A stretch of DNA of 63,090 bases, filler included, from Octopus bimaculoides (Eukaryota), in the NCBI RefSeq assembly GCF_001194135.2. It is 3 parts of 3 records of this genome, joined end to end, with 100 filler letters (N's around TTAATTAATTAA, not from the genome) between each part and the next. Parts side by side here need not be neighbours in the genome. Positions count along the whole stretch, not along the records: positions 24,867 to 50,873 come from NC_068991.1; 2 more parts are not named here. The stretch is one strand, 5' to 3'. Positions 28,909 through 50,626 of this stretch are shown one piece after another (positions within the stretch are counted from its first letter, which is position 1; every line of letters begins with the position of its first letter). Position numbers and translations under genes: made by a program. The notes under the pieces are model-generated. The model saw nothing but the letters and a program-made list of their open reading frames with translations, searched no databases and was not told where the DNA came from.

Positions 28909-29588
28909 TTAAAGTGATAATTCATTGTGCTCATTGATCTGTTCCAACATGTAACTTACAGGGACTGAAAAAATACTATGTTCACATCCATCTGAAAAGT
29001 TTTCACTGTAATCAAGCATTTCATTTAAAGACTCCATTTTCTTAGGGCAAATATATTTGTTTTCAAACCAATTGGGACTATTTTCTTCAAAGTTGGTAGC
29101 ATTCTTAATTGTGTTTGTCAAAGAGTTAAATTCATGATTCCCTCTTGTTCCATGGATTTTTTTAATAAGCGAGTTCAACTCTTTTGTGAGAGTGTAACAC
29201 TGGATTGAAGGAAATTCACTGCTGACATTGGAGTTTGGTATCTGAGGAAACTTACAAATGATAAGTTTATTGCTTGCGTTAAGTTCTCTAAGAAGGGAAA
29301 CTGTCAAAAGTGCTGAGTTATCCTCTTTTAAAAAATTTACGTAATCTTGGTTGCTTTTCCACGCCTGAATTCTTTTGTGAAGAGCTTTGGAGTAAACAAG
29401 AATTATAAAATCAGACTTTTGAATTTCTAAACTCAGTCTTAATGGATCACCACCTCTCACTAGCTCAGCAGCAACTTCTAACTTACATTTACTCTTATTC
29501 ATGAAAGATATAAACTTATCAATGGCTTCACAGTGGTAATAATGGTCCTCTGTATAAAATAACAGCCCTTTTTTCTCTTGGATTCTTC
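28909..29588 (-). CDS. IL17R: IL17R-like terminal coding exon: SEFIR domain and C-terminal tail
   Basis: Acceptor atattttcag|GA. Translation GLLFYTEDHYYHCEAIDKFISFM...IQKSDFIILVYSK...YTLTKELNSLIKKIHG matches remembered SEFIR motifs (FIxYSxDxxxHxxxVxxFAxFL; IxxADxVIIVCS; YxLMxxLxxLxxxLHG). Stop TAA at 28909-28911. Confidence 0.9.
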
Positions 29589-32500: not shown

Positions 32501-35500
32501 AATTTCTATCAGATTCTCAACTGGAATATATTGAGTTTCAATCAAATGACAAGTACAAAAGGGAAAACTTGACTGGCTTTTGTTAATGCCTCCAACATGA
32601 AGGATATATTTAAAAATCATTTGCTAGCAATGGATTTCTGTATTTGGCATAACCTATTTATGTAAAAAAAAAAATTTTCAAAGATGAAATATATGAAATT
32701 TATATATACGTTGATATTAACAATGTTAATAAATGCAATCAGTTTCCATTTCAGGAATTACAAAATTTGAACCACAAATTGGCAATATTTTGCATACTCC
32801 CACCTCAAAAATTCCAGTTCTCATTGACAGGTATTTAATTTGTGACAAAATAGGAATTACATCTACAAGAAATATTTCCTGAAATAGACTGGTGTCCTAT
32901 ATGTGAGATTTAACTCATCTGCTTAAGACCATGTAATCAGGGCTAAGCTATCAGATATACAGATAATTTTGGTGATACTACATGAGCATATGTCTGAACA
33001 AAGATTGCATACTCACGTTTGAAATAGTAAAAACTGAGAACAAGAAGCACAAGAATGACAATAGCACCAATAAGAGCAAGGAATATGTGTAATTCAATAG
33101 GTTTTGATGAGCTTTTGTTTCTGAATTTTCTACATGTACCAGTCACTAGAAAATAAAATAGAAATCAAAATTTTGTTATTTTGTCAAAGACAAAATTGGA
33201 AATAATTTTTTAAAATATCAATTTAAACTCAATAAGCAAAAGTATTGTTAAATTGGTTCAATAGATGTTAGTTTCAGTTCATCATATATAAAGAGAGACG
33301 ATTTGTCTGATAACTGACAAGTGGTTGTAACACAGCTAAAATCAACTTGCTGCAGGAATTTATGTTATGAAATTCAGTGACTTCAATAATCCACTATCAT
33401 TGCTGACACACACACACATCTCTCTCTCTCTCATATAATTCATTTGAACTAAACATTTCACCTGAAAGGTTTTCATCCTGAGGGTGTTCTTCAGTACTTC
33501 ATCCTTCATCTTTCTGGGCCTCCCACTTCTATACGTTCCATCCACTTTGAGAGATCAGCACTTCTTTATGGAGCTGTCGACATCCACCCACATCACATAA
33601 TTAAACTAGTACAGTCTTCTCTCTTGCATACAGCAACCAATTCTTCTTAAGCCTAACTTCTGTCTCAGAACACTAGCACTCTGTCAAGTATGTACCCTTA
33701 CACTACACATCCAGCAGAGCATACTTGCCTCTTTCTTTTATAACCTTTGCATGTCCTCTGCATTCAGGGCCTATGTCTCACTACCTGTCTGAAACCAAAG
33801 AACAAAAGGCCAAAGGAAAATGAAAAAAAATGCACTCAACACCAGAGCTGAAGACACCTCCGAAATGGGGGGGGGGGGCTCACCATGTTGACAATGGTAG
33901 AGGAGTAAGAGTCAAAACCAGATGTGGTTCCTCCTGATGATGTCCTTATCCATTGGATCCTATAAAGAATCTGTTGAGATAGCGAACCACGAAACATGGT
34001 CGGAATTCCTCCATGGTCTTCCTTTCACTTGGAGACAGTAACCTTTCATGACCAACAGAGGTAGCACTTCTTTGAATTTCTTCAATCCCATTCTTATTCT
34101 AGCTATCACTCTCTCCATGCATCATCCCCCACTATTAATTTGGTCCCCTAGGTAGCAGAAATGATTTACTACCACTAATGAACCACCAGGGCATTTGAGA
34201 GAATCAACTTCCTGAGTCTCTATAGTTTTTGTGGATCCAGTGCATCTTCCACATACGAAAGCTATCTTCTCTGATAACCTTCCTATTAATCCACTGCACC
34301 GCTTGTGTGTCCATAGCTTATACTGGGTACACCATATGGAATTCTTGCCTATACCTTTCCTACAAATCAAACAGAATCACCCCCCTGACTTGGGCAGGAT
34401 CCTGTCAGTGTTCTTGCTTACTAGGACCTTAGTTTTTACTATGTTAACTTTAAGGTCACACCTAGAATTTCTCATCTAGCTTTGAAATGAAATCCACTAC
34501 GAGAGCAAGACCATCAGCACATAGTTCCCAGGGGCTGCTGAGTTTGAATTCCTCTGTTATGGCCTGAAGGACAATGATGAAAAGGAGGAGACTAAGGATT
34601 GAGCCTTGATGAGCCTCTACTTGTACACTAAATTCTTTACCGTACTCTTGGTTAACTCTCACCTTACTGACAGCACCTTTGTACATGACCTGTACAGCTT
34701 TCATCAGCTACTCATCTATCCCTAGCCCCATCAGAGTCCACCAAATCACACAGTGGGGCACTCTATCTAAGGCGTTCTTAGCTAAGTACTTCTCTTGAAG
34801 TTGCCAGACTGAAAATAGCATCAGTAGTGCTTCTTTCCCAGACAAAGCTGGACTGCATTTCGTCTAGCCTATGTTTGCTCCTAATTGATTGGGCTATAAC
34901 TCTCTCTGTAATTTTTATCACCTGATCCAGGAGTTTGATGCCCCTGTAATTGCTTCTATCATCTGCATTGACCTTACCCTTGTAGCAGCTAACAATTATG
35001 CAGCTATGCCAGTCACTGGGTATTACACCTTCCTAAATGACCGGATCAATTATGCGAGTGACCAGCCCATATACTACCTTACTGGATATTTTAAGCATCT
35101 CAGCTGTGATTCTGGATGAACCAAGGGCTTTCCAGATTTTCAAGTTTTCAATTGCATTATATACCATACTGTTGTCCACTAGGTCTCTCTGTTGGGTTTA
35201 AATGAGGGAGACTCCCTTTATCCCATTCATTCTCTACATTCAACAGTCTTGCATAGTAACTTTTCCATGCTTCTTTCTTGTCCACATCATTAAGTGCAAG
35301 CATATCATTATCCATCTGCACACTTCTCTCCAACAATATTTCATTTCTCACTGACACACTGTCTGGCAATCTGGAAAACTTAAGTTTCTGATCTTCATGC
35401 TATAGGACTTTGGCAAACCTCTTCCTTTATGCTCTTATGCTGAATAGACCTGGCATCTAGCCTCCTTTTTAGCTTTCTGATAAGATTCTTTCATACCCTC

Positions 35501-37817
35501 TTTTCCACTCTTTCCAGGTTTGTCTTTTCTCTTTTATGGCCCTGTTAATGTCACTGTTCTACCAGCACATCACCCTTGGTCTCTGCAGGGATTTTGCTCC
35601 AACCATAAATTTGGTCTGTAGCCCTTAGTAGATTGTCCCCTAAGAACTTCTGTTGTCCTCTACATCATATGTCTCTATCTCTCCTTCCTTCTCATCATAG
35701 GCTTCATTGAGGACATCTCTAAATCTCTACCCATTTGAGGGATCCTTGAGCTTCCACAGCCACCTTTTCCATGTTAGGTTGCATCTCAGGATCTTTCTGA
35801 CCCTAAACCTGAGGTCACTCATCACTAGCTTATCTTGAGTTGTACATTCTTCCCCTGGGAAGGATTTTGCATTTACGAGCATATATCTATCCATGTGTCT
35901 GGTGAGGATGTAGTCGATCTGGCTACTGTGTTCCCCTTATAAAGCAACCCTTTATTTGAAAATAATATTCAATCACTATTTTCAAATTGTGACCTCACTG
36001 TATGTTTTATCTACCACTACTATCTGCTGCTCATCAGAACTGGCTGGCTACCCATCACTCCTAATTCCTCCCAATATATATACTCTGTCTTATTTCCTGT
36101 ACATCCATTAAGCACCTTACTCATTACTTCCACCATCATGCAACTATATTACTCCGAAGCTCCCACAGGTCTTATATCCATACCTCATCAACCTTTTCTT
36201 GCTGATTTCCAAACATTTTATGCAAAATACACAATACATAATCTGCATTTTAATAATGTTTTTTCTTGGGCATTATTTTAGTTTTGCTTACCTATAAAAT
36301 TAGAGGATCTCGACCGATGACAGTCTAAACCACACTTTCCAGTATCTGAGGGACATATACATTTCCCATCATCATTCCAAAATTCATCAAATATTTCAAC
36401 CTTTAAAAAGAAAATAAAAAAAAAACACATCCACTGAATTAATATTTAAATAAACAAACAAAACAAATGAGAGAGAAGCTTCAATATTTTCATCATAACA
36501 TATCCTTGTACTTTAACCTCACATCTTTCTTTCCAGTTGGGGAAGCCACATGTATTCACCTCTTCAGCAAGACACCTGCCCCGTCCCCCTGACACACTTT
36601 CACCTCCCTCAATACAATATTTCACTTGTGATTTCACAAGTGCTGGTGCCACAAAAAAAGCACCCAATACACTTTGTAAAGTGGTTGGTATAAGGAAGGA
36701 CATTCAGTTGTTGAAACCATGCCAAAGCAGATGTAGTTTGGCACAACCCTCTGGCTCATTGGCTCCTGTCAACATGTCCAGCCTATTCCAGCATAGAAAA
36801 AAAGACATTAAATGATGAGGATGATCATCCTAGCAAGCAAATAACGAATGCAAGTAGTCTTAAAGTTATACTTCTTCAGACAACAAAAGAAAGAAAATGT
36901 ATTGTTAGAGCCCAAACAACATTAATCAAGTCCAAAATTAATTTTAAATGATTCCTCAAAATTCCGTAAAAAATATTTTAATGGAGTTCTGAGGGAGATC
37001 ATTTCTAACATGTGCAATAAAAGAAATCTTACACATGGAAATTAATCTGTAGAGGCCAAAGCCAATGGAAGGAAGGAGCACCACATTTAATAACATACAC
37101 TTTACCCACAAACACTTCAAGATAACTCTTACTGGCCTTACAGTTAACCCAACCAACGGACATAACCCCAAGCCTAATCCCCTGACCCTTTTTCACAGCA
37201 GCCACAAACTAGATGAGTTAATTCACCTCTGACAATAGAAAACAGTTGCCATATTCCCTTCCATATCAGCTAACTCTGATGAGCATAAGGTTATATAATC
37301 AGATTGTTACCTAACATTCCATTGTACTCCTTGTGTGAAACCAATTGGTAAGCTCAGCCATGATGGATATATAATACTGTGCATTTCGGATAATATACCC
37401 ACTCTATTAACAAATATGCAAGTGCATTTTTTCCCTGACTTATAGACTCTTAGATGACTTATGTACACACACACACACACAAATATATATATACAATTAC
37501 AGCATGGAAGATGTTTGTAAGCCATTTAAGAACACACAAAAACCATTAGCTTCACTTCAACATTTAAATTTAATTTGTGTCAAAATATTTTTGTCACTTT
37601 GAAATTGTAACCTGTTCACTGACAAAACTTTGTGGACACAAATTAAATTTAAATGTTAAAGTGAAACTAACAACTTTTGTGTGTTCTTAAATGGCTTACA
37701 AACATCTTCCACACTGCAATTGTTTTTGTTTCAGCACACGATCTCAGATCAAGTCACTTAATATGCAAGTACATCTCTGTAATATACATACATACATATA
37801 TATATATACGCAAACAT

Positions 37818-37885
<68 letters not shown>

Positions 37886-40800
37886 TTCATCACCATCATT
37901 TAATGTCCTCCTTCCATACTGGAATGGGTTGGATGGTTTGACAGGAGTTCGCCAGGCTGCAGCCTGTACCAGGCTTCTGTGTCTGTTTTGGCATGGTTTT
38001 ACAGTTGGATGCCCTTCCTAACACTAACCACTTTACAGTGAGGACTGGGTGCTTTTTAAATGGCACCTGCACTGGCAAGGTCACCAAGTAACTTTGCAAG
38101 ATGAAGAATCTTTGAAAGATGAGGGGGCATTGGAGGTGATCTTGTGTCAGATGATGAAAAGTTAGAGTGTGACAGAGAGACAGAAACAGACGTCTTGCTA
38201 CAGAGAAGGTACATGGTTACCCAACAAGAGAGAGGGAGAGAAAGAGAGCAGAAATAGGTGTGCTGCTGAAGTGGAGGGACATGGTTACCTAGAGAGAGAG
38301 AGAGGAGGAGTTAACAAGAAAGAGGTGTGCTGCTGTAAAGGGGATACATGGCTACCTAGCCAGATTTAAGAGCAAGAGAAAGAGGAAGAGAGAGTGATCA
38401 AGAATGAGGGCAGAAACAGGTTTGTTGCTGTAGAGTAGATACATGATTACTCAACCAGAGGGAAGAGCAAGGAAAAGAGAAGGAGAGAGAGTAGGAAACA
38501 GCAAGAGCAGGGGAAGGATGGCAATAAGTGTCAAGGTTTATCACATCCAGCAGAGCATACTGACTTCATTCCTCTCTAGCCTACACATGTCCTCTGCATT
38601 CAGAGCCCATGTCTCACTACCATGGAGTATAGCCATTTGTACACTAGCATCATGCAATCTACCTTTTACTTTGAGAGAGAGTCCTTTAGTTGCTAACAGA
38701 GGTAGTAACTCTGAACTTTCTCCATCTTATTCACATTCTAAAAACAATACACTCAGAGCATCCACCTCACCTAGGTAACAGAAACTATCTACTACCTCGG
38801 ACATTTAAGAGAGTCTAAGTCCCATGTGCTCTTAGTGTTTACTCTTCCTGCACATCTACCACACACAAAGGTGACCTTATCTGTTAATCTATCTGTGATT
38901 CCACTGCATCTCTTATGTGTCCATAGCTTACATTTGGTGCAGTGTGTGGAATTACTTTCTATTCCTTTCCTACAAATTGAGCAGGGCCACTTACTTGACA
39001 GAAATAGAGTCTTATCTGCTTTCTTGCTAACAACAACTTTAATCTTAGCTAGATTAACTTTAAGGCTCTTTGATTCCAGGTTTTGCTTCCATACCTGGAA
39101 CTTCTTCTCCAATTCTGCTACAGATTCTGCAATAAGAGTGAGGTCATCAACATATAGTAGTTCCCAAGGGCATCCAGTTTTGAATTCCTCTGTTATGGCC
39201 TGGAGGACTATGAGGAATAGGAGTGGACTAAGAACTGAGCCCTGGTGAACTTCTATCTGTATTACTAAATTCATCACTGTATGCATGGCTGACTCTCACC
39301 TTACTGACAGCACCTCTGTACATGGCTTGTACAGCTCTAACAAGCTACTTCTCTACTCTTAGCTCCCTTAAAGACCACCACAAAACAGAGCATGGAACTC
39401 TATCAAAAGCTTTCTCCAGGTTAACGAAAGCTAAGTACAGTGGATTACTTTTGACCAAATACTTTTCCTGTAGCAGTCTCACTAGGAAGATGGCATCCCA
39501 GGAACAAAAGAAAACTGCATCTCATTTAGTTTAATTCTATTTCAATCCAATTGAACTATAACTCTCTCAGTGGAATATGCCCAAAAGTTCAGTTGAAAGT
39601 TCGAATATGGCTGAGGGACTAAAACAAAAAAATAAAACATTTCCAGATGTTTTCTCGGAGTAACTGGGCTCTTTTACACTTTCACTCTTTTACTTGTTTC
39701 AGTCATTTGACTGTGGCCATGCTAGAGCACCACCTTTACTTGAGCAAATCGACCCCAGGACTTATTCTTTGTAAGCCTAGTACTTATTCTATCAGTCTTT
39801 TTTGCTGAACCGGGGACGTAAACACACCAGCATCGGTTGTCAAGTGATGTTGGGGGACAAACACAGACACACAAACATATACATATATATATATACATAT
39901 ATACACATATATATGACGGGCTTCTTTCAGTTTCCACCTACCAAATCCACTCACAAGGCTTTGGTTGGCCCAAGGCTATAGTAGAAGACACTTGCCCAAG
40001 GTGCCACGCAGTGGGACTGAACCCAGAACGAGGTGGTTGGTAAGCAAGCTACTTACCACACAGCCACTCCTGTGCCTGTTGCATGAAAAGTAGAAAAGCC
40101 TGTAAAAATGGGTGAGGTGTTAGAAGCCTGTAAAATTTAGAAACAACACTATAAAACAGTAATGAAAAGTCGAGTCAACTTATACAACTAATGCAATGTT
40201 TGGAAAAGAAAAAAGTCCCTAGTTTGGTGAAGAACTGATAGCTGTAAATGTGTGAGTATGTGTAGAAGTGTTTGTCATGGAGGAGACAAGTTTTTTTTTT
40301 TAATTACATAGCTAGTGGAAAGTCCTGAGAATTTGAAAATGTGGAAAATTCCACAAGAAAAGTCAGGGAACACATACAACAACAATTTATGCAATTATCC
40401 AAATTAACAGAATTCCTTTAAAATGTAACAAAATGTAGTAAACAAAGACCAATATGGAGAATAACTTACAGTTATGTAGTAGCTTCCAGGACATATTCCA
40501 AAAAACTCATGGGTTAGATATGGGGTTGTCTGAAAAAAAAAAAAAAAAGATTTATAAAGTTGGACTATGAATAGATTTTCTGAACATTTTTCCACAGTAA
40601 ATCTATAATTTTCAAAGATATTTTTGAAACCTGGTGTAACTGTAAAATAGGATTTAAAAATATGCTAATTATTCTGGTCCCATTAAATTTGGTGAAATGA
40701 TTTATATTTTACTGAATTCAATGGTTAAAATTAGTTTTAGTCAAGACAAAAAACAGTAATTTAATAGTTGAAATAACAAAAAAAATAAAATAAATAAAAC

Positions 40801-43800
40801 AAAATGGATTTTTTTCTAGCAATAGTATTGATGTGCCCAAAACAATCATTCTTTACATAATTACATCATGTAAAACAAAATAGCCACAAACTAATTTTCT
40901 TTGTTTTGTTTTAAAGCCAGACCTAGATCTGATAGAAAAATAGAAAGAAAATTTAAATACTAAGTTTTATGTCTAAAATTCACTGAAAATAATAAGACTG
41001 TGTAGAGTGACAAGACAAGGGAGTGTATTGAAGCAAAGTTACATTTATTACTGATATTACAAAATAGTTAACATCAATATAGTCAAAAATAATTTACCAG
41101 GCAAATTAGTAAAACAATGCAATGGAATAAGTTTTATGTCATTGAGTTTTACTAAAAACTAATTAATGGGTAATATGAATGAAGATAAAGAAATAACGAT
41201 TAGAAAAAGAAGAAATATTTTCTCTAATTACTACTGAGGATTAGAGGAATTTTAAAAACACTGAAATGGTGAAATTTGACAAACCTTGGAAGAATTGACA
41301 GCCGCCATACTTAAAATGGTTGAATTCACATAATAAAGTGTTACATTATATATTTTTATATTACACTTTGAAGGTCCTTGTTTAAAATCCACAGTAATGT
41401 TCTTCCCTTTTATTCGATACTCAACAAGAGTTGTCCATTCACGACACACTGCAAAAGTAAAGGGAAACCATTTATGTGAACATAAACATTACACAGATAG
41501 TAAATGTTAAAGTAGGCTAAGGTTGACAAAATTTAAGCAGGAAAGAAAATATTTAAAATTAAAATTTTCATGTCAATATTTGAATGATTCTTGTTCCCAC
41601 AATATTACAAGAAAATTCCCACCAACAAGCTTCAATATCTTTATTGCTGAATTTTATCTTTAACATTAAAGATCACCATGTCCCCTCAAATGTCAGAAAC
41701 TTGCAGTAGAAATGTTTGTGAATGTTTAGACTCATTAACAACAGAAAGAAGTCCTTATTAATGTGAATGCCAAAATTACTTGCTGCATAAGGTGGTGAGC
41801 TGGCAGAATCCTGATAAAAAAAAGTACCAGTTGAGGACAGATCAATGTAATTGACTTACTCCTTCAACCAAACTTGCAGACTTTGTGGAAATATTTTAAA
41901 CCAATAATATTGGCTACATATGTAGTCCATTTACAAATTAATATCAAAATAAAGAAATAAATAATTTTTCATCAATGACAACATTTACCACCTCATTCTT
42001 CCTACAGCTTCTATGCTTTTGGAACACCCACTTACACAGTAAATTAGGTCAACTAGGTTTTTTGAGCATTTAAAAGACATTATTTTACATAAGCTCTATC
42101 TGCAAACTTCTGTGCATACAAAGTTTACCTTCTCTGTAAGCCAGTGACCCCACTTACACATGTTTTATGTCCATAATTTACATTGGGTGTGCGATATGAA
42201 ATTTCTACCTATTACTTTTTTGCATATCAAAAACTGTCATTTTCCTGATGGTACCAGAATCTGTCTTTCCTTCTTACTAAAATCTTAGTCTGTTACTGGC
42301 TTTTGCAGTATCATCATCATTATCTTCTTGCACATCTCGTCTTTATTGACATTTATCATTATCAACAATATTCATAATTTTACCTGTGTATATTAGAATC
42401 TTGTTGATCCTCTTCACTTCTATCTCAGTTACTTTTCTCATCAAAAATATTAAATTCACAAACACCTTTTCTCAATATTTCTGATTCTACCATTTATTCT
42501 ACCACTGAATGCCTACTCTGTTACATCAAAGGAAATGTGATAATTCTTCTTTGCACACGCTTACTTTAAATCTGCTGTTGATGTTAGTCTTCACTAACAT
42601 CTGGTATAAAATATTAAAATACCTGCAAAATATGTGTAGTCACAGTATTGTGCTGTATTAGCTCATTCCCTCCATCAAATCAACAATGCATATACCTGTG
42701 CCACACATCAGATGTCAAAGTAATTGCAGAGTAACATGAGATGAAGTGCTTTTCTCAAGATCACAATGTGCAACCTGGCAATTCGAAAATATCAAGACTA
42801 TGAAATATGTAAAGTTTGTTTAAATGTATTTATCTGAATCATCAACAAATTTTTAGTTCTTAAGTTAAAGAAAGAGAACCATTTATTTCATATTTCCATA
42901 CACCCCTCTACACCTACCACTAGTCTCTTTAAATTCTATCAATATATACTCCCTTCATAACTAAACTATGCAGCATTAGAGGTACAGCCTTTTTTGTAGA
43001 TTGCATCTATAAACTGTATCCTGTCTACCTACATTATGGAAGCAACATTTTATGCCCAGTAGTTTCAGACTGCCACTATCAGCCCATTGGTAGCTAAACC
43101 TCTTCCCTTTATCAGAGCAATAAATGGCCCCTCAACTAAAAGACTGGTGTAAGATGGAAGGGAATGCTTAGTCTAGTCCCAAACAAACATTCATATGATA
43201 AAATTAACCTGATCAACAATGAGGCTAGCAAAAGAAAGGTGTCTAAAGGTGAAAACCATGCCAAATAAATGAACAGTGGTTTGAAAGTGGGGCTCTCTAA
43301 TCGCACAGCACACAATCCCCCAAGTACCAGTGGCATAATAAATTGCATTGAATCAATGGTATATAAAGTGGTTGTGAGAGAAGAAACTGGTGTTAAAAAC
43401 CTTGCCAAAAAGGAGAAAGAAAGGAACAAAGAAAGATTAGAGAGAATAATTTAGTCCTACATCAAACAATTTCTCTAGTTTCAGTGGTGTGATAAAAAGT
43501 ATTGATGCTGTGGAACAGCTGGTAATGGAAAGAGCATCCAGCTAGCAGTAAGACTAAAAATAACATTATGTACTTAACAACAGCAGAGTTGGTAGATTTT
43601 ATTCTGTTGCTGTAGGTGCCAGATGATGAAGGAGCGTGACATGACACTGTCAAACCAGTCTAATCCATAGGAAAAACATACACAAAACAATATCCGGCGT
43701 TAGGAAGGGCATCCAGCTGTAGAAACTCTGCCAAATCAGATTGGAGCCTGGTGTCACCAGTCCTCAGTCAAATTGTCCAACCCATGCTAGCATGAAAAGC

Positions 43801-46800
43801 GGACGTTAAACGACGATGATGATGATGATATATATATATATATGTACAGACAAATAAGTGTGTATAACACACGTACACATGCATAAACACTTTGTTTAAT
43901 TTCATGTCAGTCACCATTTGCTAATGTCATCACCATTGTTATGCCCACTTTACTATGTTTGTACATCATCATCATCATCATTTAACGTCCGCTTTCCATG
44001 CTAGCATGGGTTGGACGATTTGACTGAGGACTGGTGAAACCGGATGGCAACACCAGGCTCCAATCTAATTTGGCAGAGTTTCTACAGCTGGATGCCCTTC
44101 CTAACGCCAACCACTCAGAGAGTGTAGTACCAACATGTATATCAAAGTCACCAACCATGATAAGTGGATGTCACAGAAATAGTTCTTTTGCTCATCTCTC
44201 AATCCAGACTGAGGTGTCTCAGTTGATGTAACAACTGCATTTGTTTCTCACCTAACTTTAAATTCATTCTGTCACATACTCTGACTACCTCAACCACTCT
44301 ATTCAGTTTCTTCAATTGCAGTATACATTCCCAACCTAGTACCATGTGGTTACCCAGCTAAAAGAATTTGTACCAGTGTTCATTGCCTGTGAAAAGTCTG
44401 GCAGAAGCTTCCCTCCCTATTAACACTTTGAGCCAGCCCACATCTACTTTCTTCTCTCTAACATCACTACAATATCTCCACATCTATTGTTTATCACATC
44501 AATATTAATGATGGCAACCCAAAGGTTCTCTGTCCAATGAGAGTTTCCAAGATAGTAGCTTATGACTGGATTGCTAATGTAAAATAATTGAAAAATGATA
44601 AATTCTATATTTCTTTCAAGATTGTAAAAGAAATAAGGTGCATTAATAAAGATAAATATGATTCTAATATAGTTTTTCAATCTGAAAGGTAATTTAATAA
44701 AAATACTTACATTTTACCTCCTGTGTCTGAAAAGGAAAAAAGAGAGGGATTTTAAAAAATATTTCATTCTTAGGGAATTTAATTTCAATGTTGTGGTTTT
44801 AAACTAGTTTTGAGTCATCCATATTGAAGTTGACTTATAATAAGAGATCAAGCTCATGTCAATCCTATCTTTTATTTAGACATAATATATCTAGAACAAA
44901 ATTACTCATTGTGATCTTCCACTTTAAAGACACTACAGTATGATTTCAGCAAGATTTGGATGCTAATTTTAACAGTTTCAGCAATCATATACTTTTGTGT
45001 TAGTTTCTTGAAAGTAAAATATATGGGTGCAAGAAAATCTCATACCATTAAGTTTTGCATATTCTTTTATTCTTTTACTTGTTTCAGTCATTTGAGCACC
45101 ACCTTTAAGTCGAGCAAATTGACCCCAGGACTTATTCTTTGTAAGCCTAGTATTTATTCAATCGGTTCCTTTTGCTGAACTGCTAAGTTACGGGGACATA
45201 AATGCACAAGCATTGGTTGTCAAGGGATGTTGGGGTGACAAACAAAGACACACACACACATGAACAAAACATTCAAACACTAAGGTTTGAAATAAGATGT
45301 TAATATCATCTGTGGATAAAATTTAAAATTGATGGTATCAAAAGTAGTAACATAGGTGGTTCGCAAGCAAATAGCATTAAGTTAGCTATAAAATACAAAT
45401 TAGACGGGCTTCTTTCAGTTTCCTTCTACCAAATCCACTCACAAGGCTTTGGTTGGCCCAAGGCTATAGTGGAAGACACTTACCCAAAGTGCCACACAGT
45501 GGGACTGAACCCAAAGCCATGTGGTTGGTAAGCAAACTACTTATACAACCACTCCTGTTAGTCGAAACCATAATGATATCCATAGGCAGCTGATGATGAA
45601 GATATGTTGGATTGTTGGTTCAGTTGTTTGTGTATATGTGGAATAGTATTATTGGATTGTTGTTATGGCTCTGGAATAGTATTATAACACATCCATTTGA
45701 TATACATATATAGTCATACATATAAACATATATATATATATATCATCATCATCATCATCGTTTAACGTCCGCTTTCCATGCTAGCATGGGTTGGACGATT
45801 TGACTGAGGACTGGTGAAACCGGATGGCAACACCAGGCTCCAATCTAATTTGGCAGAGTTTCTACAGCTGGATGCCCTTCTTAACGCCAACCACTCAGAG
45901 AGTGTAGTGGGTGCTTTTACGTGTCACCCGCACGAAAACGGCCACGCTCGAAATGGTGTCTTTTATGTGCCACCCGNNNNNNNNNNNNNNNNNNNNNNNN
46001 NNNNNNNNNNNNNNNNNNNNNNNNNNNNNNNNNNNNNNNNNNNNNNNNNNNNNNNNNNNNNNNNNNNNNNNNNNNNNNNNNNNNNNNNNNNNNNNNNNNN
46101 NNNNNNNNNNNNNNNNNNNNNNNNNNNNNNNNNNNNNNNNNNNNNNNNNNNNNNNNNNNNNNNNNNNNNNNNNNNNNNNNNNNNNNNNNNNNNNNNNNNN
46201 NNNNNNNNNNNNNNNNNNNNNNNNNNNNNNNNNNNNNNNNNNNNNNNNNNNNNNNNNNNNNNNNNNNNNNNNNNNNNNNNNNNNNNNNNNNNNNNNNNNN
46301 NNNNNNNNNNNNNNNNNNNNNNNNNNNNNNNNNNNNNNNNNNNNNNNNNNNNNNNNNNNNNNNNNNNNNNNNNNNNNNNNNNNNNNNNNNNNNNNNNNNN
46401 NNNNNNNNNNNNNNNNNNNNNNNNNNNNNNNNNNNNNNNNNNNNNNAGTTTCCGTCTACCAAATCGACTAAAAAGGCTTTGGTCGGCCCGAAGACTCATA
46501 TTGTCATCGAATGCTCAAAATGAGGAGTAGATAGACAACTGACAACTGAGGAAGGGTCATTCTTTGCGTTACTTGTCTTGTTTTCCATTTTTTTCTCTCA
46601 TTGCTTGTGTACTGAACCCATTTGTTTTTGTATTACATATTGTTTACTGTTGGTGACGTCCTGTACGCATATATATATATACTAGCAGAGATACCAGGCG
46701 TTGCCCGTGTTACATGCAATTGAAGGATGAGACTTTTCTCTTATATTTTCGGTAAAGAACTGAAATACATATGAATCGAATTTCATCAAAATTGCACATG

Positions 46801-48365
46801 AGGGTTCTTTCCCTCTTTACACACCCTAAAAAAATTCTAATCATGAGACATGTATCCCATACTATTGATCTTTATGCGCAAATTCCAAAATTTCAGTCTT
46901 TTGGAACCTGTAAAAAGGATTTTGCTCCTGAAAAATGGAGCTCACGGAGCTGTAAAATGTGGGAATGCAGGCCCCTATTGGGGGTGAGGGTGTTAATGTC
47001 AACCAGAGAAGTTGAATTGTTTTTAACTTGGGTCTTATAGTATGCCTGTATATATGTGAGAGTATAGTTTTACTTTAATAGTTTCAGTATGAAATTGAAA
47101 GTATTAAAGTGAAAGTATTTGAAATTACAGTAGCAACATGTTGTTTCACTTTTGACATGTAATACTGAAATAGTGGAATAGTTTCAGTGTTAAAGTGAAA
47201 GTATCTGACATTACAGTAGAGTGATGTTATTGTTTCACTTTTGACACGTAATAGTGAAATAGGGGAGGAGATATGATATTGCTGTGGGCTCGAACTATGC
47301 AAGGAGTTAAAAATTGTTTTCGCCTAAGACACTACATGAACCCTAAGTAAGGCATGTGTTAATTTGGAATGAAATTGGTTGTGTAGTTCTGGAGTTTTTG
47401 GGATTCACACAGACACATTGTCATCTTTATATATGTGATATTTATGCACATATTCGAAAATTCTAGTGTTATGGACTGTGTAAAAAGGATTTTGCTCCTG
47501 AAAAAGGGAGCTCTTGGAGCTGAAAAATGTGGGAGTTAAGGCCTCATTGAACTTCGATTTACCACTAACGGTTATTGAATAGTATCATTGAGCACATAAT
47601 ATATAAAATTATACGTCGACTAATTTAATTACAGTATAATCTAATTATAGTATAATTAAATATTAAGCGGAGGTAAAGAATACGCACACCACCAGTTTTC
47701 GGCGTAACTCTAACCCTAAACACGGGGTGTGCGTATTCTTTACCTTTGCCAAAATATTACTTGCATGTAAATTACAGTTAACTGTATTACTATTAACTTT
47801 TTTTCCCTCAGAAAATATTACTTTTATTAATATTTAGCAGAAGGAATTATAAATTTAAATTTTAGAACATATTTCTTACCAGATTTTCCACCTCAATATT
47901 GGTTTGACAAAAGAAAGACAAAGAAAGGGGGGGGGAAGGAACAAAACCAAATAGAAAAGAAAAAGCGGAACACAAACAAAAAAAAAAGAAGAAAAAGCGG
48001 GGGGAAAAAAGAGAAGAAAGAGAAAAAAATATATAGATTTATATAGAATGGTTAAACAAGTTGAGTTCGGAGAAATAAATCGCTGCTGATTCATTTCCTG
48101 ACTGTCATATTTATAACATAAATGATAAAACAAATTACTTCGGTTTGAAAGGAAAAATCAACTTGAAAAAACAAATGTCATAAAAAGATAGTTATTTCAA
48201 AAGATGAAGCAAAAAAAACTGGATAACGAGATAAAAATACATTAATTGCCAAAGTGAAATTGTTGCATGAATTGTCATACTTACATTATCTGTCCGGTTA
48301 GGGCTCATGGCGAAGTTGCGAATAAACAACAGTGTCAGGGTAACTGCCGTTAAAAATCGTTTCAT
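28909..48365 (-). CDS. IL17R: IL-17 receptor-like (SEFIR) type I membrane protein, spliced CDS join(48285-48365,44711-44726,41285-41448,40470-40529,36292-36400,33017-33145,28909-29588), 412 aa
   Basis: Seven exons with GT-AG boundaries and consistent phases (0,1,0,0,1,1) total 1239 nt = 412 codons + TAA. The domain order is signal peptide, Cys-containing ectodomain with sequons (NRT, NIT, NVT, NST, NSS), one hydrophobic helix, then a SEFIR-like domain. The paralog subtype (RA/RD etc.) cannot be assigned by eye. Confidence 0.8.
30010..30300 (-). mobile_element. Degenerate tRNA-like SINE copy
   Basis: tgtttcagttattggactgtggccatgctgg...gtaggactgaacct resembles the 24870 family. Confidence 0.65.
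30490..31921 (+). mobile_element. RTE LINE fragment (RT plus 3' UTR) in the last IL17R intron
   Basis: KAFGPSGITTEMLK, QLGFMPG, FVDMEKVF, GVHQGSVLS and LYTDD remnants; tail ...gatgttaaatgatga. Confidence 0.85.
32070..32890 (+). mobile_element. hAT (Charlie/SPIN, GTF2IRD2-like) transposase C-terminal relic
   Basis: LELQFQHFSDLD...VFQNLF...QLEYIEFQSND followed by a frameshifted FGxTYLC...FSKMKY dimerisation-domain motif. Confidence 0.7.
33017..33145 (-). CDS. IL17R: IL17R-like transmembrane exon (129 nt, phase 1-1)
   Basis: Acceptor ttttattttctag|TG and donor AAAC|gtgagt. Encodes TGTCRKFRNKSSSKPIELHIFLALIGAIVILVLLVLSFYYFK, a hydrophobic helix followed by FKRR once spliced to the SEFIR exon. 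Confidence 0.9.
33360..36200 (-). mobile_element. Decayed RTE LINE (EN to RT to 3' end fragments), interrupted at about 33800-33980
   Basis: ORF remnants DKKEAWKSYYARLLNVENEWD, HQGSILS, HFCYLGDQINSGG and SGRPRK. Confidence 0.8.
36292..36400 (-). CDS. IL17R: IL17R-like ectodomain exon (109 nt, phase 0-1)
   Basis: Acceptor ttttctttttaaag|GTT and donor ATAG|gtaagc. Encodes VEIFDEFWNDDGKCICPSDTGKCGLDCHRSRSSNFI (4 Cys). Not in the ORF track. Confidence 0.85.
36480..36825 (+). mobile_element. RTE 3' tail copy (degenerate)
   Basis: ggtataaggaaggacattcagttg...gacattaaatgatgaggatgat. Confidence 0.7.
37493..37723. mobile_element. Palindromic MITE (~230 bp)
   Basis: ACAATTACAGCATGGAAGATGTTTGTAAGCCATTTAAGAACACAC...AACATTTAAATTTAATTTGTGTC is mirrored at 37620-37723. 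Confidence 0.85.
37886..38100 (-). mobile_element. RTE 3' tail copy
   Basis: catcaccatcatttaatgtcc...gttggatgcccttcctaacactaaccac. Confidence 0.75.
38480..39560 (-). mobile_element. RTE LINE RT fragment
   Basis: ORF 38792-39286: VHQGSVLSPLLF...ELLYVDDL...KVNLAKIK, plus a Cys-rich CSIC/CTKC/CGRC segment. Confidence 0.85.
39677..40077 (-). mobile_element. tRNA-like SINE, full-length copy
   Basis: Head GGCACAGGAGTGGCTGTGTGGTAAGTAGC...GGGTTCAGTCCC and tail gaaacaagtaaaagagtgaaag. Confidence 0.88.
40470..40529 (-). CDS. IL17R: IL17R-like ectodomain exon (60 nt, phase 0-0)
   Basis: Acceptor (T)n-cag|ACA and donor ACT|gtaagt. Encodes TTPYLTHEFFGICPGSYYIT, resembling the FnIII E-F strand pattern (F-x-x-L/I-x-PG-x-Y-x-I-x-V). 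Confidence 0.85.
41285..41448 (-). CDS. IL17R: IL17R-like ectodomain exon (164 nt, phase 1-0)
   Basis: Acceptor ttacttttgcag|TG and donor AAG|gtttgt (weaker, chosen for phase). Encodes CREWTTLVEYRIKGKNITVDFKQGPSKCNIKIYNVTLYYVNSTILSMAAVNSSK, beta-rich with several N-glycosylation sequons. Confidence 0.8.
43677..43829 (+). mobile_element. RTE 3' tail copy
   Basis: ggcgttaggaagggcatccagctg...ggacgttaaacgacgatgatgatgatg. Confidence 0.9.
43964..44128 (-). mobile_element. RTE 3' tail copy, inverted relative to 43677-43829
   Basis: catcatcatttaacgtccgctttcc...cctaacgccaaccactcagagagtgtag. Confidence 0.9.
44711..44726 (-). CDS. IL17R: IL17R-like 16-nt microexon (TQEVK + 1 nt; phase 0-1)
   Basis: Strong acceptor ctctcttttttccttttcag| and strong donor |gtaagt around ACACAGGAGGTAAAAT. 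It supplies exactly the phase shift needed between exon 48285 (phase 0) and exon 41448 (phase 1). Confidence 0.65.
45060..45557 (-). mobile_element. tRNA-like SINE copy interrupted by ~140 bp (about 45262-45402)
   Basis: Both halves match the 39677 copy. Confidence 0.8.
45743..45976 (-). mobile_element. RTE 3' tail copy (runs into a gap)
   Basis: Nearly identical to 17138-17375. Confidence 0.9.
46681..47440. mobile_element. Non-autonomous Helitron/Helentron-like element with an internal ~100-bp duplication
   Basis: One end ACTAGCAGAGATACCAGGCGTTGCCCGTG, the other ...gacacattgtcatctttatatat. An internal duplication lies at 47080-47270, and a related copy at 9755-10080. The family assignment is from memory. 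Confidence 0.5.
47667..47750. repeat. ~80-bp hairpin mini-element (copy 2)
   Basis: GCGGAGGTAAAGAATACGCACACC...GGTGTGCGTATTCTTTACCTTTGC. Confidence 0.75.
48285..48365 (-). CDS. IL17R: IL17R-like first coding exon, signal peptide
   Basis: ATG at 48365-48363 encodes MKRFLTAVTLTLLFIRNFAMSPNRTDN (basic n-region, hydrophobic h-region). Donor AAT|gtaagt. An acceptor tttattacag| at 48375 implies an upstream non-coding exon. Confidence 0.75.
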
Positions 48366-48404
48366 AGTGTCTTTCTGTAATAAATTTAGTCACGACTGAA
48401 ATAT

Positions 48405-48672
48405 CGATGCAGTAAATAAGAATAGCTTTAGTCAGATCATTGTCAAGATAATAACTCCAACAGCAACATCATATATTGGCGTCTATCAATATAACGATAC
48501 AGTAAACAAAAATAGCTTTAGTCAGATCATGGTTGGTATAATAACATCTCCAGCAGCAACGTCATTATATTGGCGTCTGTCAGTATAATGATACAGTAAA
48601 TAAAAATAGCTTTAGTCAGATCATGGTCAGGATAATAACATCTCCAGCAGCAACGTCATTATATTGGTATCT
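48405..48672. repeat. Minisatellite, 3 x ~90-94 bp
   Basis: Unit cagtaaa...aatagctttagtcagatcat...ataataac(a)tc...cagcaac...tatattggcgtct. Confidence 0.9.
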
Positions 48673-49345: not shown

Positions 49346-50626
49346 TGTAAGGATCTAGCTTGACCTTGCCTGAAACCAAATCCATCTGCTTGTTGCTTGT
49401 CAAAACGAGCGGTAAATCCTCTCCACACTAGATGATTGATGAGGAAACACTCGACCCCACCCCTCGGGACCTGTGCTGGTCAAGGAAAGGTCAGTCCTTT
49501 GTTTAGGGTTTGATCTACATTACTGACCGTAAGTCTATATAACAGAGAATTTCCTATCTCTTTCTCTTATGTGTCAGCTATGACCAAGGAGCAACACTCT
49601 CTCTTTTGTGTCAGCCAGACCAAGGAGCAGCACCCGCTTTTGCGACAGCCTTAACCAAGAGCAGCACTTCCCGGCACAGTTTCGATTACCTGTTGTTTTC
49701 CGCAGGAACTTCGTAGCGGGCTGTATGAAAGATGTGATATCAGATCGATATGATGTAGCCCACTACTAAATGTAGCGTGTAGATGTAACGCTTGAAGGAT
49801 CTCGCGACGGAGTACCAACAAACATCGAAGAATCAACACCAAGAAGGAAGAAATATTGTTTACATAGATCTGTTCGTTTGCCCGACAAGTAGTTACAGAT
49901 ACAGCAGCAATTCTAGTGATAGTGACAAGGTTGGCTCGCTTGTTAGTAGTTGATAATGTAGAAAAAGGTTGTCTGTCTGTAGAGAGTGAAAGAGTGCGGA
50001 ATGCACGGTGCTGACTAGAAAGGAAGAAACGATAAAGGTGGCATCGCCTTTCTTGTGGCCGAAAGCCTCTCTTCGTATGTCGAGCGACGGGCGAAGGGAA
50101 GTGGGCTATGTTTCGATGTAATGACAATTACTGTCATTGAAGCACATGGCTTTGTTTACATCTAATCGGCCTTTTCCGTAAAGGAGGGATGGGAAATGAC
50201 TGGGGAAGCCTTTCTGCTTTGCATAACCACTGACTAGAGAGGAAGTTTCATAGATACAGAAGAAAGATCCAGATAGTTTCATAGATACAGAAGAAATGTT
50301 AGACAAAGAAAGAAAGAAAGAAAGAAAGAAAGCGATGGTCGGTGACCGAGAGAGAGAGAGAGAGAGAGAGAAAGAAAGTGATGGTCGGTGACCGAGAGAG
50401 AGAGAGACAAAGAAAGAAATAAAGTGATGGTCGGTGACCAAGAGAGAGAGTGTTTCATAAATACTGACTATATTTTTAACAAGTTGAAAGAACGAACCGC
50501 TTTCTTTCTTTCTTTCGATCTATGAAACTATCTGTATCTTTCTTCTGTATCTATGAAACTTCCTCTCTAGTCAGTGGTTATGCAAAGCAGAAAGGCTCAT
50601 ATATATAGATAGATGGCATAACTACA
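49346..50626. mobile_element. Possible solo LTR-like element with an internal foldback
   Basis: Starts TGTAAGG, tentative end ACTACA. TATA-like CTATATAA near 49534, short internal tandem repeats, and an inverted repeat 50207-50290/50515-50597. No TSD found. Confidence 0.3.

What the first reader, a model, noticed from the sequence alone, without database searches (positions are those of the whole stretch)
28909..48365. Compact IL-17 receptor-like gene with an apparently single-FnIII ectodomain
The hand-spliced model gives 412 aa with only ~140 residues between signal peptide and TM. Vertebrate IL17RA-RE ectodomains have two FnIII-like domains (~290 aa). Octopus is known for a large expansion of IL-17-like ligands, but the receptor side is poorly described. 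A minimal one-domain receptor with 7 ectodomain Cys could be a lineage-specific receptor or co-receptor class. Most exons are too short for ORF callers, so the gene may be mis-annotated as a SEFIR-only ORF.
Basis: partly seen in the sequence, partly recalled or inferred. Interest (0 to 1): 0.8.

Follow-up and report, generated by a model that had tools for sequence, protein, structure and literature searches.

The report
Octopus IL-17 receptor paralog lacking D1
This is a real, already annotated but uncharacterised Octopus bimaculoides gene for an IL-17-receptor-like membrane protein that lost its outer (ligand-gripping) domain by deletion of three exons, and whose remaining outer domain is evolving unusually fast.

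Summary
Seven minus-strand exons with canonical splice sites (48365-28909) translate exactly to RefSeq XP_014779801.1, LOC106875972 isoform X2 of Octopus bimaculoides (412 aa).

Domain layout: signal peptide, one Ig_ILCR1/FnIII-like domain (75.9 bits), a Cys-rich stalk, a TM helix and a SEFIR domain (27.7 bits, cut-off 23). The gene is not mis-annotated as SEFIR-only. The ectodomain has 8 Cys, not 7.

Its neighbours in a tandem cluster are about 150 aa longer and carry a membrane-distal domain, D1. An AlphaFold model of one neighbour hits human IL-17RA, IL-17RB and IL-17RC ectodomains first. Here the three exons that encode most of D1 (360 nt, frame-neutral) are deleted from fully sequenced intron 2. 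Exon 2 survives as a 16-nt micro-exon.

The assembly gap lies in intron 1, where the D1-bearing paralog has no coding exon. The gapless O. vulgaris ortholog has the same seven-exon, D1-less structure.

The ORF is maintained in both species. Yet the ectodomain exons are only 74-85% identical, against 94-96% for most flanking intron. D2 dN/dS is about 2.8.

Best reading: a derived, D2-only accessory or modulatory IL-17R subunit under diversifying selection.

The parts
48285..48365 (-). Coding exon 1 (81 nt). Starts at the ATG at 48365 and encodes MKRFLTAVTLTLLFIRNFA|MSPNRTDN, i.e. the signal peptide plus 8 residues. Donor is GTAAGT. An AG acceptor at 48376-48375 (coding exon starts 48374) shows that a 5' UTR exon lies further upstream, outside the piece.
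   Evidence: Sequence read. Homologous to exon 1 of the long paralogs (tblastn E=2e-7). Part of the exact-match model.
45977..46446 (.). Assembly gap (N) inside intron 1. It is flanked by interspersed repeats and is not in coding sequence.
   Evidence: The homologous intron 1 of the D1-bearing paralog (L005 3100-13562) holds no coding exon. No D1-like coding was found in the gapless O. vulgaris intron.
44711..44726 (-). Exon 2, a 16-nt micro-exon (ACACAGGAGGTAAAAT, encoding TQEVK plus the first base of L33), phase 0 to 1. It is the homolog of the 28-nt exon 2 of the long paralog (EPYYLYPTN), shortened by 12 nt, with the same acceptor and donor.
   Evidence: alignment A5. Conserved as a 16-nt exon in O. 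vulgaris at L003 32820-32835.
41449..44710 (-). Intron 2, fully sequenced. This is where D1 exons e3-e5 of the long paralog (129+113+118 = 360 nt) would lie; they are absent.
   Evidence: Collinear blastn blocks skip L005 19055-20697 and 20972-22273. tblastn with eight D1 queries finds nothing in this interval at E<1. Smith-Waterman scores of e3-e5 are at shuffle level, while the control Ig exon scores 133 against about 20. No N in the interval.
41285..41448 (-). Exon 3 (164 nt, phase 1 to 0). First half of the D2 / Ig_ILCR1 domain (CREW...AVNSSK).
   Evidence: The exon alone hits Pfam PF23608 at 34.5 bits..
40470..40529 (-). Exon 4 (60 nt). D2 strand TTPYLTHEFFGICPGSYYIT. The acceptor follows a T16 tract.
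36292..36400 (-). Exon 5 (109 nt). End of D2 and the Cys-rich segment VEIFDEFWNDDGKCICPSDTGKCGLDCHRSRSSNFI.
33017..33145 (-). Exon 6 (129 nt). Stalk (VTGTCRKFRNKSSSKPIE) and the TM helix LHIFLALIGAIVILVLLVLSFYYF (residues 162-185).
   Evidence: AF2 predicts a helix at 159-188.
28909..29588 (-). Exon 7 (680 nt, stop included). SEFIR domain (residues 195-329) and an acidic C-terminal tail.
   Evidence: Pfam PF08357: 30.1 bits for the exon alone and 27.7 bits in the full protein, cut-off 23.
38792..39286 (-). Reverse-transcriptase/PHD fragment of a decayed retrotransposon inside intron 4. Not part of the gene product.
   Evidence: Pfam RVT_1 at 45.6 bits.

Best explanation
LOC106875972 encodes a derived, D2-only member of an octopod-specific tandem cluster of IL-17-receptor/ILCR-type receptors.

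Shown:
- In a duplicate of a two-domain receptor (D1-D2-TM-SEFIR), a genomic deletion removed the three exons that make most of the membrane-distal domain D1. Together they are 360 nt, and the exon before them and the last of them both end in phase 1, so the frame is kept.
- Exon 2 was also shortened by 12 nt. It now splices straight to the first D2 exon.
- The event predates the O. bimaculoides / O. vulgaris split.
- The ORF, all splice sites and all 8 ectodomain cysteines have been kept in both species.
- The remaining ectodomain exons diverge 4-5 times faster than most adjacent intron sequence (D2 dN/dS about 2.8), whereas the SEFIR exon is about as conserved (93.8%) as its upstream intron (93.0%).

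Inferred mechanism:
- The protein is a glycosylated type I membrane protein. Its SEFIR domain can engage SEFIR-containing partners, either an Act1/CIKS-like adaptor or the neighbouring full-length receptors.
[quoted passage not shown] Lacking D1, this protein cannot build the canonical IL-17R ectodomain assembly.
- It therefore most likely acts as an accessory or modulatory chain. It would join or tune complexes nucleated by the full-length paralogs, contacting a fast-evolving partner through the D2 'site-3-like' surface. That partner could be one of the roughly 31-36 expanded octopus IL-17-like ligands, or a pathogen factor.
For: - Gene model: an exact match of the 7-exon translation to XP_014779801.1.
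- Domains: Ig_ILCR1 75.9 bits and SEFIR 27.7 bits. The AF2 model shows one beta-sandwich (strands 41-110, pLDDT 82-90), a TM helix and a SEFIR-like alpha/beta fold.
- Paralogs P0007, P0008, P0006, P0009, P0010 and P0011 carry about 130 extra residues before CREW (alignment A2).
- The AF2 model of P0007 has two beta-sandwiches. Its best PDB matches are IL-17RA (4hsa_F 8e-11, 3jvf, 7uwm, 5n9b), IL-17RB (7wg3, 7uwk) and IL-17RC (7uwn_F).
- Exon structure and phases of the long gene. Homology of the micro-exon with long exon 2. Absence of e3-e5.
- The O. vulgaris ortholog is syntenic (the long gene in L002 lies immediately upstream of the short gene in L003), gapless, and has the same 7 exons.
- ORF maintenance: 7 indels, all in frame. 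Only 0.5% of neutral simulations with 150 substitutions stay stop-free.
- Selection: short-pair D2 has 59 non-synonymous against 6 synonymous differences, omega 2.8, Fisher p=0.015. The long-pair D2 omega is 0.59 at the same overall dS, about 0.11.
- Short-gene ectodomain exons are 74-85% identical against 94-96% in most 300-nt intron flanks. Long-pair exons are 87-96%, similar to their introns.
- The roles of D1 and D2 in vertebrate complexes are taken from PMC9477748.
Against: - Expression and use of the 16-nt exon rest on two independent annotations.
- SEFIR scores only just above Pfam's cut-off. SEFIR omega is 0.65 and whole-gene omega is 1.24, neither significantly different from 1.
- Foldseek with the short model returns only generic FnIII/Ig folds, not IL-17R specifically.
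- The omega test is a single pairwise comparison on 105 codons.
- The intron contrast is not uniform: the 300 nt downstream of exons 2 and 6 are only 74% and 79% identical.
- Exon-limited gene conversion from an unsampled paralog cannot be fully excluded.
- No binding, partner or signalling data exist. The function is inference.
Confidence: 0.55

Rival explanations
1. Autonomous single-domain receptor. The D2 domain alone binds a subset of the expanded octopus IL-17-like cytokines, or a non-IL-17 ligand. The protein then signals on its own through SEFIR homodimers, without any D1 tip-to-tip contact.
For: - The strong excess of non-synonymous change is confined to the ectodomain, as expected for a surface that directly engages a co-evolving ligand.
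- D1-less ILCR-type receptors recur in cephalopods: P0028 in O. vulgaris, and the P0049 cluster of short Logan contigs plus a cuttlefish protein. This suggests that a D2-only ectodomain can be functional.
- In IL-17RB the D2/linker 'site 3' is the largest single cytokine contact, at 760 A2 (PMC9477748).
Against: - In all solved vertebrate complexes, sites 1 and 2 and the signalling-critical tip-to-tip interface are on D1.
- No binding data exist.
- The gene sits in a cluster with full-length paralogs that could supply D1 in trans.
Confidence: 0.2
2. Decaying duplicate. After losing D1 the gene is non-functional or nearly so. The high dN/dS reflects relaxed constraint, on the way to the truncated or broken states seen in other cluster members.
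For: - Whole-gene omega is 1.24, not different from 1 (p=0.39). SEFIR omega of 0.65 is not significant.
- Sister loci are visibly eroding. LOC106875973 lacks SEFIR (P0012, 340 aa). The LOC128251274 locus lacks the Ig exon. O. vulgaris P0013 is a short-type ectodomain copy whose predicted protein starts with unrelated sequence and has no SEFIR.
- No Logan transcript-derived copy is present in P0004's cluster.
Against: - Relaxation predicts exon divergence equal to intron divergence (about 5%), not 15-26%.
- All 7 coding indels are multiples of 3.
- The ORF is stop-free where only 0.5% of neutral simulations are.
- All splice sites, and the Cys and core residues of D2 that are invariant across paralogs, are retained in both species.
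Confidence: 0.15
3. Annotation or assembly artefact. The real transcript carries D1 exons that are hidden in the gap or elsewhere, so the receptor is an ordinary two-domain one.
For: - There is a 470-N gap of unknown true length in intron 1.
- O. vulgaris has about 13 kb where O. bimaculoides shows about 2.3 kb.
- No reads could be laid on the locus.
Against: - D1 exons e3-e5 of the paralog lie after exon 2, in an interval that is gap-free here and lacks them.
- The gapless O. vulgaris ortholog also lacks any D1-like coding sequence between exon 1 and the Ig exon.
- Both RefSeq isoforms and the O. vulgaris models are D1-less.
Confidence: 0.04

Closest known systems
Octopus bimaculoides LOC106873178 (XP_014775896.1, 566 aa) and LOC106875974 (558-573 aa), the neighbouring full-length paralogs on CM046611.1
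   Same: Same signal-peptide exon, D2 exons, TM exon and SEFIR exon, with identical exon phases. About 65% protein identity over the parts they share. Same chromosomal cluster.
   Different: The paralogs have 10 coding exons, including e3-e5 (360 nt), which with exon 1's tail and exon 2 encode D1. Here e3-e5 are deleted and e2 is 12 nt shorter. Their orthologous pair evolves at omega about 0.5, against 1.24 overall and 2.8 in D2 for this gene.
Human IL-17RA, IL-17RB and IL-17RC ectodomains (PDB 4HSA, 3JVF, 7UWM, 7WG3, 7UWK, 7UWN)
   Same: Type I topology and a cytoplasmic SEFIR domain. The two-domain ectodomain of the long octopus paralog has these structures as its top Foldseek matches, so the family is IL-17R-like in fold.
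   Different: No sequence-level PDB match. This gene keeps only the membrane-proximal D2-like domain. It therefore lacks the domain that carries cytokine sites 1-2 and the tip-to-tip interface (PMC9477748). The short model on its own matches only generic FnIII domains.
C. elegans ILCR-1 (Pfam ILCR1_N PF25519 + Ig_ILCR1 PF23608 + SEFIR)
   Same: A full-length Ig_ILCR1 match (2-114 of 114, 75.9 bits) plus SEFIR.
   Different: There is no ILCR1_N-type domain. Even the long octopus paralogs match ILCR1_N only weakly (15-16 bits, below the cut-off of 27).
Other D1-less cephalopod ILCR-type proteins: O. vulgaris CAI9729820.1 (528 aa), and the 17-member P0049 cluster (Logan contigs of about 3-4 kb, 547-565 aa, plus one Acanthosepion pharaonis protein)
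   Same: The layout is signal peptide, then directly an Ig_ILCR1-type domain, then TM and SEFIR (P0028: Ig_ILCR1 44-141, SEFIR 218-360).
   Different: They belong to a much more divergent, older lineage (E 1e-34 to 1e-17 against the cluster profile) with a stronger SEFIR match (about 45 bits). Their D1 loss, if it was a loss, was a separate event from the exon deletion documented here.
Mussel IL17R isoforms with short ectodomains (Mytilus IL17R-C, TM at 13-35; IL17R-A, TM at 221-243; PMC8353272, Table 3)
   Same: They are invertebrate SEFIR receptors whose ectodomain is much shorter than the vertebrate two-FnIII layout.
   Different: They are different lineages. No exon-level account of domain loss and no selection analysis has been reported. 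IL17R-C has essentially no ectodomain.

Membership tests
IL-17 receptor family (SEFIR-containing type I receptors) | Cytoplasmic SEFIR domain | tested here: met
   PF08357 at residues 195-329, profile positions 4-148 of 150, 27.7 bits against a cut-off of 23. The exon alone scores 30.1 bits. The margin is small.
IL-17 receptor family (SEFIR-containing type I receptors) | Single-pass type I topology: N-terminal signal peptide, one TM helix, SEFIR inside the cell | tested here: met
   MKRFLTAVTLTLLFIRNFA is homologous to the paralogs' signal-peptide exon. The hydrophobic segment 162-185 is followed by KRR. AF2 predicts a helix at 159-188. SignalP and TMHMM were not available.
IL-17 receptor family (SEFIR-containing type I receptors) | Ectodomain with two FnIII-like domains (D1 membrane-distal, D2 membrane-proximal) | tested here: not met
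   Only one beta-sandwich is present. D1 exons e3-e5 are absent from the gene and from its O. vulgaris ortholog. The long paralog does have both domains.
IL-17 receptor family (SEFIR-containing type I receptors) | Binds an IL-17 cystine-knot cytokine and recruits Act1/CIKS through SEFIR-SEFIR contact | not testable with these tools
   No binding or complex prediction was possible. Octopus IL-17-like ligand expansion is known only from the literature (PMC8353272).
ILCR1-type receptors (Pfam Ig_ILCR1 / ILCR1_N) | Ig_ILCR1 domain (PF23608) | tested here: met
   75.9 bits, E=3.4e-21, residues 36-142 covering profile positions 2-114 of 114.
ILCR1-type receptors (Pfam Ig_ILCR1 / ILCR1_N) | N-terminal ILCR1_N domain (PF25519) | tested here: not met
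   No hit in P0004 or P0005. The long paralogs P0010 and P0008 give sub-threshold hits of 15.2 and 15.8 bits.
IL-17R fold (structure) | The predicted ectodomain structure is most similar to solved IL-17R ectodomains | tested here: inconclusive
   The long paralog model has IL-17RA, IL-17RB and IL-17RC as top hits (4hsa_F, E=8e-11). The short protein's model has only generic FnIII/Ig hits at E of about 3e-4 or weaker, with no IL-17R in the top 50.

The most novel reading that the evidence does not exclude
D2-only IL-17R-type chains are a functional, recurrently evolved cephalopod receptor class. They would recognise fast-evolving partners (members of the expanded IL-17-like ligand set, or pathogen factors) with a single membrane-proximal FnIII domain. 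They would signal or modulate signalling without the D1 'tip-to-tip' architecture thought to organise all IL-17R complexes. On this reading, the exon-specific hyper-divergence seen here is the footprint of an arms race.
Probability: 0.25. Interest if true: 0.65.

Novelty: new variant of a known kind. Interest (0 to 1): 0.4.

Why it matters
Octopus has one of the largest IL-17-like ligand repertoires known. I found no paper in the held library that describes its receptor side.

This locus gives a clean, exon-level example of how a lineage-specific immune-receptor cluster diversifies by modular loss:
- here, D1 is deleted;
- a neighbour (LOC106875973) has lost SEFIR;
- other neighbours are intact.

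In the D1-less chain the remaining ectodomain then evolves several times faster than most neighbouring intron sequence.

Suppose the D2-only chain is functional. It would then be a natural experiment on whether IL-17R signalling can work, or be tuned, without the D1 cytokine sites and the tip-to-tip contact that structural work on vertebrate receptors treats as the family's organising principle.

If it is not functional, this is simply an ordinary eroding paralog in an expanded family.

Tried and rejected
1. A 6-exon model that used the alternative donor at 48281 (…RTDNVM|CREW, 408 aa). Rejected once the RefSeq protein showed TQEVKL and the 16-nt exon was found with a perfect acceptor and donor.
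2. The idea that the micro-exon is the tail of the last D1 exon (…AQEVDTF). Rejected: the direct alignment showed no convincing flanking homology, whereas the flanks align at 84% to exon 2 of the long paralog, with shared splice sites.
3. The extended ORF upstream of exon 4 (GFKNIFENYRF…), which LOC128251274's model P0001 reads as coding. Rejected as intron read-through: the T16 tract plus AG is the acceptor, and the phases only fit from ACA at 40529.
4. D1 remnants. tblastn with 8 D1 queries against the window, L003 and L004 found nothing beyond exon 1. Smith-Waterman scores of e3-e5 were at shuffle level.
5. Gene conversion as the cause of exon hyper-divergence. The O. bimaculoides exon 3 is closer to LOC106875974 (84.8%) than to its ortholog (75.6%). 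However, the O. vulgaris copy is uniformly about 10% further from all paralogs. That pattern fits a lineage rate increase rather than a conversion tract.
6. A PDB search with a sequence profile gave no meaningful hit.
8. An Rfam scan of the piece found nothing.
9. The search for homologous proteins with the family profile added only one more distant relative. The exhaustive representative search gave 111 relatives.

Full report
WHAT IS THERE

The finding lies on the minus strand. A 233-codon ORF at 28909-29610 hits Pfam SEFIR, and a short ORF at 41252-41449 hits the 'ILCR1 Ig-like domain'.

A search with the SEFIR exon found only about 75%-identical octopus proteins. These were paralogs, not the gene itself. 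I spliced the exons by hand and searched with the product. The top hit was P0004 at 99% identity and 100% coverage. P0004 is XP_014779801.1, XP_052827762-4 and UniProt A0A0L8GMZ8: 'uncharacterized protein LOC106875972 isoform X2', Octopus bimaculoides, 412 aa.

The one difference from my first model was a 16-nt micro-exon. I then located it at 44726-44711, with a polypyrimidine/CAG acceptor and a GTAAGT donor.

The final seven exons are 48365-48285, 44726-44711, 41448-41285, 40529-40470, 36400-36292, 33145-33017 and 29588-28909. All internal boundaries are AG/GT, and the translation matches P0004 exactly. It was also already in RefSeq and UniProt, so the suggestion of a SEFIR-only mis-annotation is wrong.

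Isoform X1 (424 aa) only adds MYCMFSFDMKDT, from a 5' exon that lies outside the piece.

THE PROTEIN

- Signal peptide: MKRFLTAVTLTLLFIRNFA.
- Mature ectodomain: 142 residues, with 8 Cys and 6 N-glycosylation sequons.
- TM segment: 162-185.
- Pfam: Ig_ILCR1 at 36-142 (75.9 bits, whole profile) and SEFIR at 195-329 (27.7 bits, cut-off 23).
- AlphaFold with a 15-sequence alignment: mean pLDDT 67.5. It shows one beta-sandwich (strands 41-110, pLDDT 82-90), a lower-confidence Cys-rich segment, a TM helix and an alpha/beta SEFIR-like domain.
- Foldseek against the PDB with this model returns only generic FnIII/Ig domains such as IL-13Ra1, gp130 and integrin beta4.

WHAT IT IS A VARIANT OF

The same searches returned longer relatives of 549-570 aa from O. 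bimaculoides (LOC106873178, LOC106875974), O. sinensis, O. vulgaris and Argonauta. All carry about 130 extra residues between the signal peptide and the CREW motif that opens the Ig_ILCR1 domain.

An AlphaFold model of LOC106873178 shows two beta-sandwiches. Its best PDB matches are human IL-17RA (4hsa_F E=8e-11; 3jvf, 7uwm, 7uwn_C, 5n9b), IL-17RB (7wg3, 7uwk, 7uwj) and IL-17RC (7uwn_F), aligned over 230-300 columns, which covers both domains. No sequence-level PDB match exists.

The family is therefore IL-17R-like in fold and architecture (D1-D2-TM-SEFIR). The gene in the window keeps only the membrane-proximal D2.

An exhaustive profile search found 111 relatives at E<=1e-3. Those looked up by name come from gastropods (Haliotis), bivalves (Mytilus, Potamilus) and cephalopods, and most listed proteins are 500-860 aa.

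HOW D1 WAS LOST

The long paralog LOC106873178 (locus L005) has ten coding exons of 99, 28, 129, 113, 118, 164, 60, 109, 165 and 716 nt. D1 is encoded by the tail of e1, e2 and e3-e5. Both e2 and e5 end in phase 1, and e3-e5 sum to 360 nt.

The window's micro-exon and its flanks align to e2 of the long gene at 84% over 790 nt. The acceptor and donor are the same, and the exon is 12 nt shorter.

Downstream, collinear blocks continue but skip two intervals: L005 19055-20697 (e3 and e4) and 20972-22273 (e5). Smith-Waterman scores of e3-e5 against intron 2 (44710-41449, no N) are at shuffle level, while the control Ig exon scores 133 against about 20. Protein-level searches with eight D1 sequences find nothing in that interval either.

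So most of D1 was removed by genomic deletion of three exons. The deletion happens to preserve the frame, and e2 now splices directly to the first D2 exon.

THE GAP

The N run at 45977-46446 lies in intron 1. No frame crosses it.

The sequence on both sides is collinear with intron 1 of the O. vulgaris ortholog, and the bases abutting the gap are multi-copy repeats.

In the D1-bearing paralog the homologous intron holds no coding exon. The gapless O. vulgaris locus (L003) has no D1-like coding sequence anywhere between exon 1 and the Ig exon.

The gap's real length is unknown, since O. vulgaris has about 13 kb there. Nothing suggests that it hides an exon.

ORTHOLOG AND AGE

O. vulgaris CAI9729974-6 (P0022, P0005, P0019) lies immediately downstream of the O. 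vulgaris ortholog of LOC106873178. This is the same order and orientation as in O. bimaculoides. It has the same seven exons, including a 16-nt exon 2 with near-identical flanks.

A neighbour-joining tree places the two short proteins as sisters. They sit inside the Octopus paralogs and after the Argonauta branch. The deletion therefore predates the O. bimaculoides / O. vulgaris split and is specific to the octopus lineage.

The cluster on CM046611.1 reads:
- LOC106875974 (+, full length)
- LOC106875973 (+, D1-D2-TM but SEFIR lost)
- LOC106875972 (-, this gene, D1 lost)
- LOC106873178 (-, full length)
.

IS IT ALIVE?

Between the two species the coding sequence differs by about 150 substitutions and 7 indels. 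All 7 indels are multiples of three. Only 0.5% of neutral simulations with 150 substitutions stay free of stop codons. All splice sites are canonical in both species. The D2 residues that are invariant across all paralogs, including seven of the cysteines, are kept.

The substitution pattern, by the Nei-Gojobori method:

| Region | Short pair | Long pair |
|---|---|---|
| Overall dS | 0.114 | 0.108 |
| Overall omega | 1.24 | 0.50 |
| D2 omega | 2.8 (59 non-synonymous vs 6 synonymous; Fisher p=0.015) | 0.59 |
| SEFIR core omega | 0.65 | 0.43 |

.

A second observation does not depend on codon models. The short gene's ectodomain exons are 75%, 80%, 85%, 74% and 80% identical between species (e2-e6). 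Most of their 300-nt intron flanks are 94-96% identical; the exceptions are the flanks downstream of e2 (74%) and e6 (79%). The SEFIR exon (94%) matches its upstream intron (93%). In the long pair, exons (87-96%) are about as conserved as introns.

Relaxed constraint cannot make exons diverge several times faster than most of the surrounding intron. That leaves positive selection, or exon-limited gene conversion. A per-exon identity matrix against five paralog loci gives no conversion signature: the faster copy is uniformly more distant from all paralogs.

MECHANISM (INFERENCE)

[quoted passage not shown] D2 and the linker form site 3 (PMC9477748).

A D2-only chain cannot build that assembly. 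My best reading is an accessory or modulatory subunit. It would pair, through D2, TM or SEFIR, with complexes nucleated by the neighbouring full-length receptors or with an Act1/CIKS-like adaptor. Its D2 surface would meet a rapidly changing partner.

The rivals are:
- an autonomous single-domain receptor;
- a decaying duplicate, disfavoured by ORF maintenance and by exon divergence exceeding intron divergence;
- an annotation or assembly artefact, which is very unlikely.

NOVELTY

The protein sequence is public but uncharacterised. Two full-text searches found no paper on cephalopod IL-17 receptors. The one paper that mentions both octopus and IL-17R treats only the ligands for octopus, and lists mussel receptors with short ectodomains.

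D1-less ILCR-type proteins also exist in a separate, older cephalopod lineage. This comprises O. vulgaris CAI9729820 and a 17-member cluster of short Logan contigs plus one cuttlefish protein.

So this is a new variant of a known kind, not a new class. The new points are the exon-level account of the domain loss and the hyper-divergence of the remaining ectodomain.

LIMITS

- The selection tests rest on one species pair.
- No binding or signalling evidence exists.

Noticed in passing
window 48401-48667: A 94-nt tandem repeat, 2.9 copies at 87% match, sits immediately upstream of the ATG-containing exon, inside the 5' UTR intron. The same repeat is present at the homologous place in the O. vulgaris ortholog (L003 about 17476-17870). 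One to two copies occur upstream of exon 1 of the long paralog (L005 2871-2979). This conservation may mark a regulatory element or may be a shared satellite.
   Followed up: partly
window 38792-39286 (-), also 34122-34704 (-): Intron 4 holds decayed retrotransposon ORFs. One fragment has a reverse-transcriptase domain (RVT_1, 45.6 bits) followed by a PHD/C1-like zinc finger. Similar fragments with the same 'KCSGL…CGRC' motif recur at 34122-34370.
   Followed up: partly
window 44034-44231 (+) and 45814-45976 (+), running into the gap: Two copies of an interspersed element whose + strand reads MKPDGNTRLQSNLAEFLQLDAL…. One copy abuts the assembly gap. The element matches several places in each of the paralog loci searched with this stretch (L002, L003, L005), so it is probably the SINE-like repeat that broke the assembly.
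   Followed up: partly
L006 (O. bimaculoides LOC106875973, CM046611.1 52.70-52.745 Mb), about 22 kb from the 3' end of this gene, convergent orientation: This neighbouring paralog, P0012 (340 aa), has D1, D2 and TM but ends shortly after the membrane (…KQSFQEKREFFHIKDHSTTKV). It is the complementary modular loss: SEFIR gone, ectodomain kept, so it looks like a decoy. It was not analysed further.
   Followed up: no
L001 (O. bimaculoides LOC128251274, CM046630.1) and O. vulgaris P0013/P0023: Further family copies look broken or chimeric. The LOC128251274 locus lacks a detectable Ig exon, and its RefSeq model reads intron as coding. O. vulgaris P0013 is a predicted protein whose first ~190 residues are unrelated sequence of unknown origin (not scanned), joined to a short-type ectodomain (TQAEVSCREW…) with no SEFIR.
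   Followed up: partly
window 40533-40548 (-), upstream of exon 4: The acceptor of exon 4 is preceded by an uninterrupted T16 tract. In LOC128251274's RefSeq model P0001 the homologous stretch is translated as 'FFFLSFCHFQ', an example of intron read-through in automated models of this family.
   Followed up: yes
window 50307-50450 and 49563-49668: Two tandem repeats lie upstream of the gene: a 46-nt unit (3.1 copies) and a 34-nt unit (3.0 copies). They create long spurious ORFs on the minus strand (49651-50441). No Pfam match was found for the one such ORF scanned (49651-50127).
   Followed up: partly
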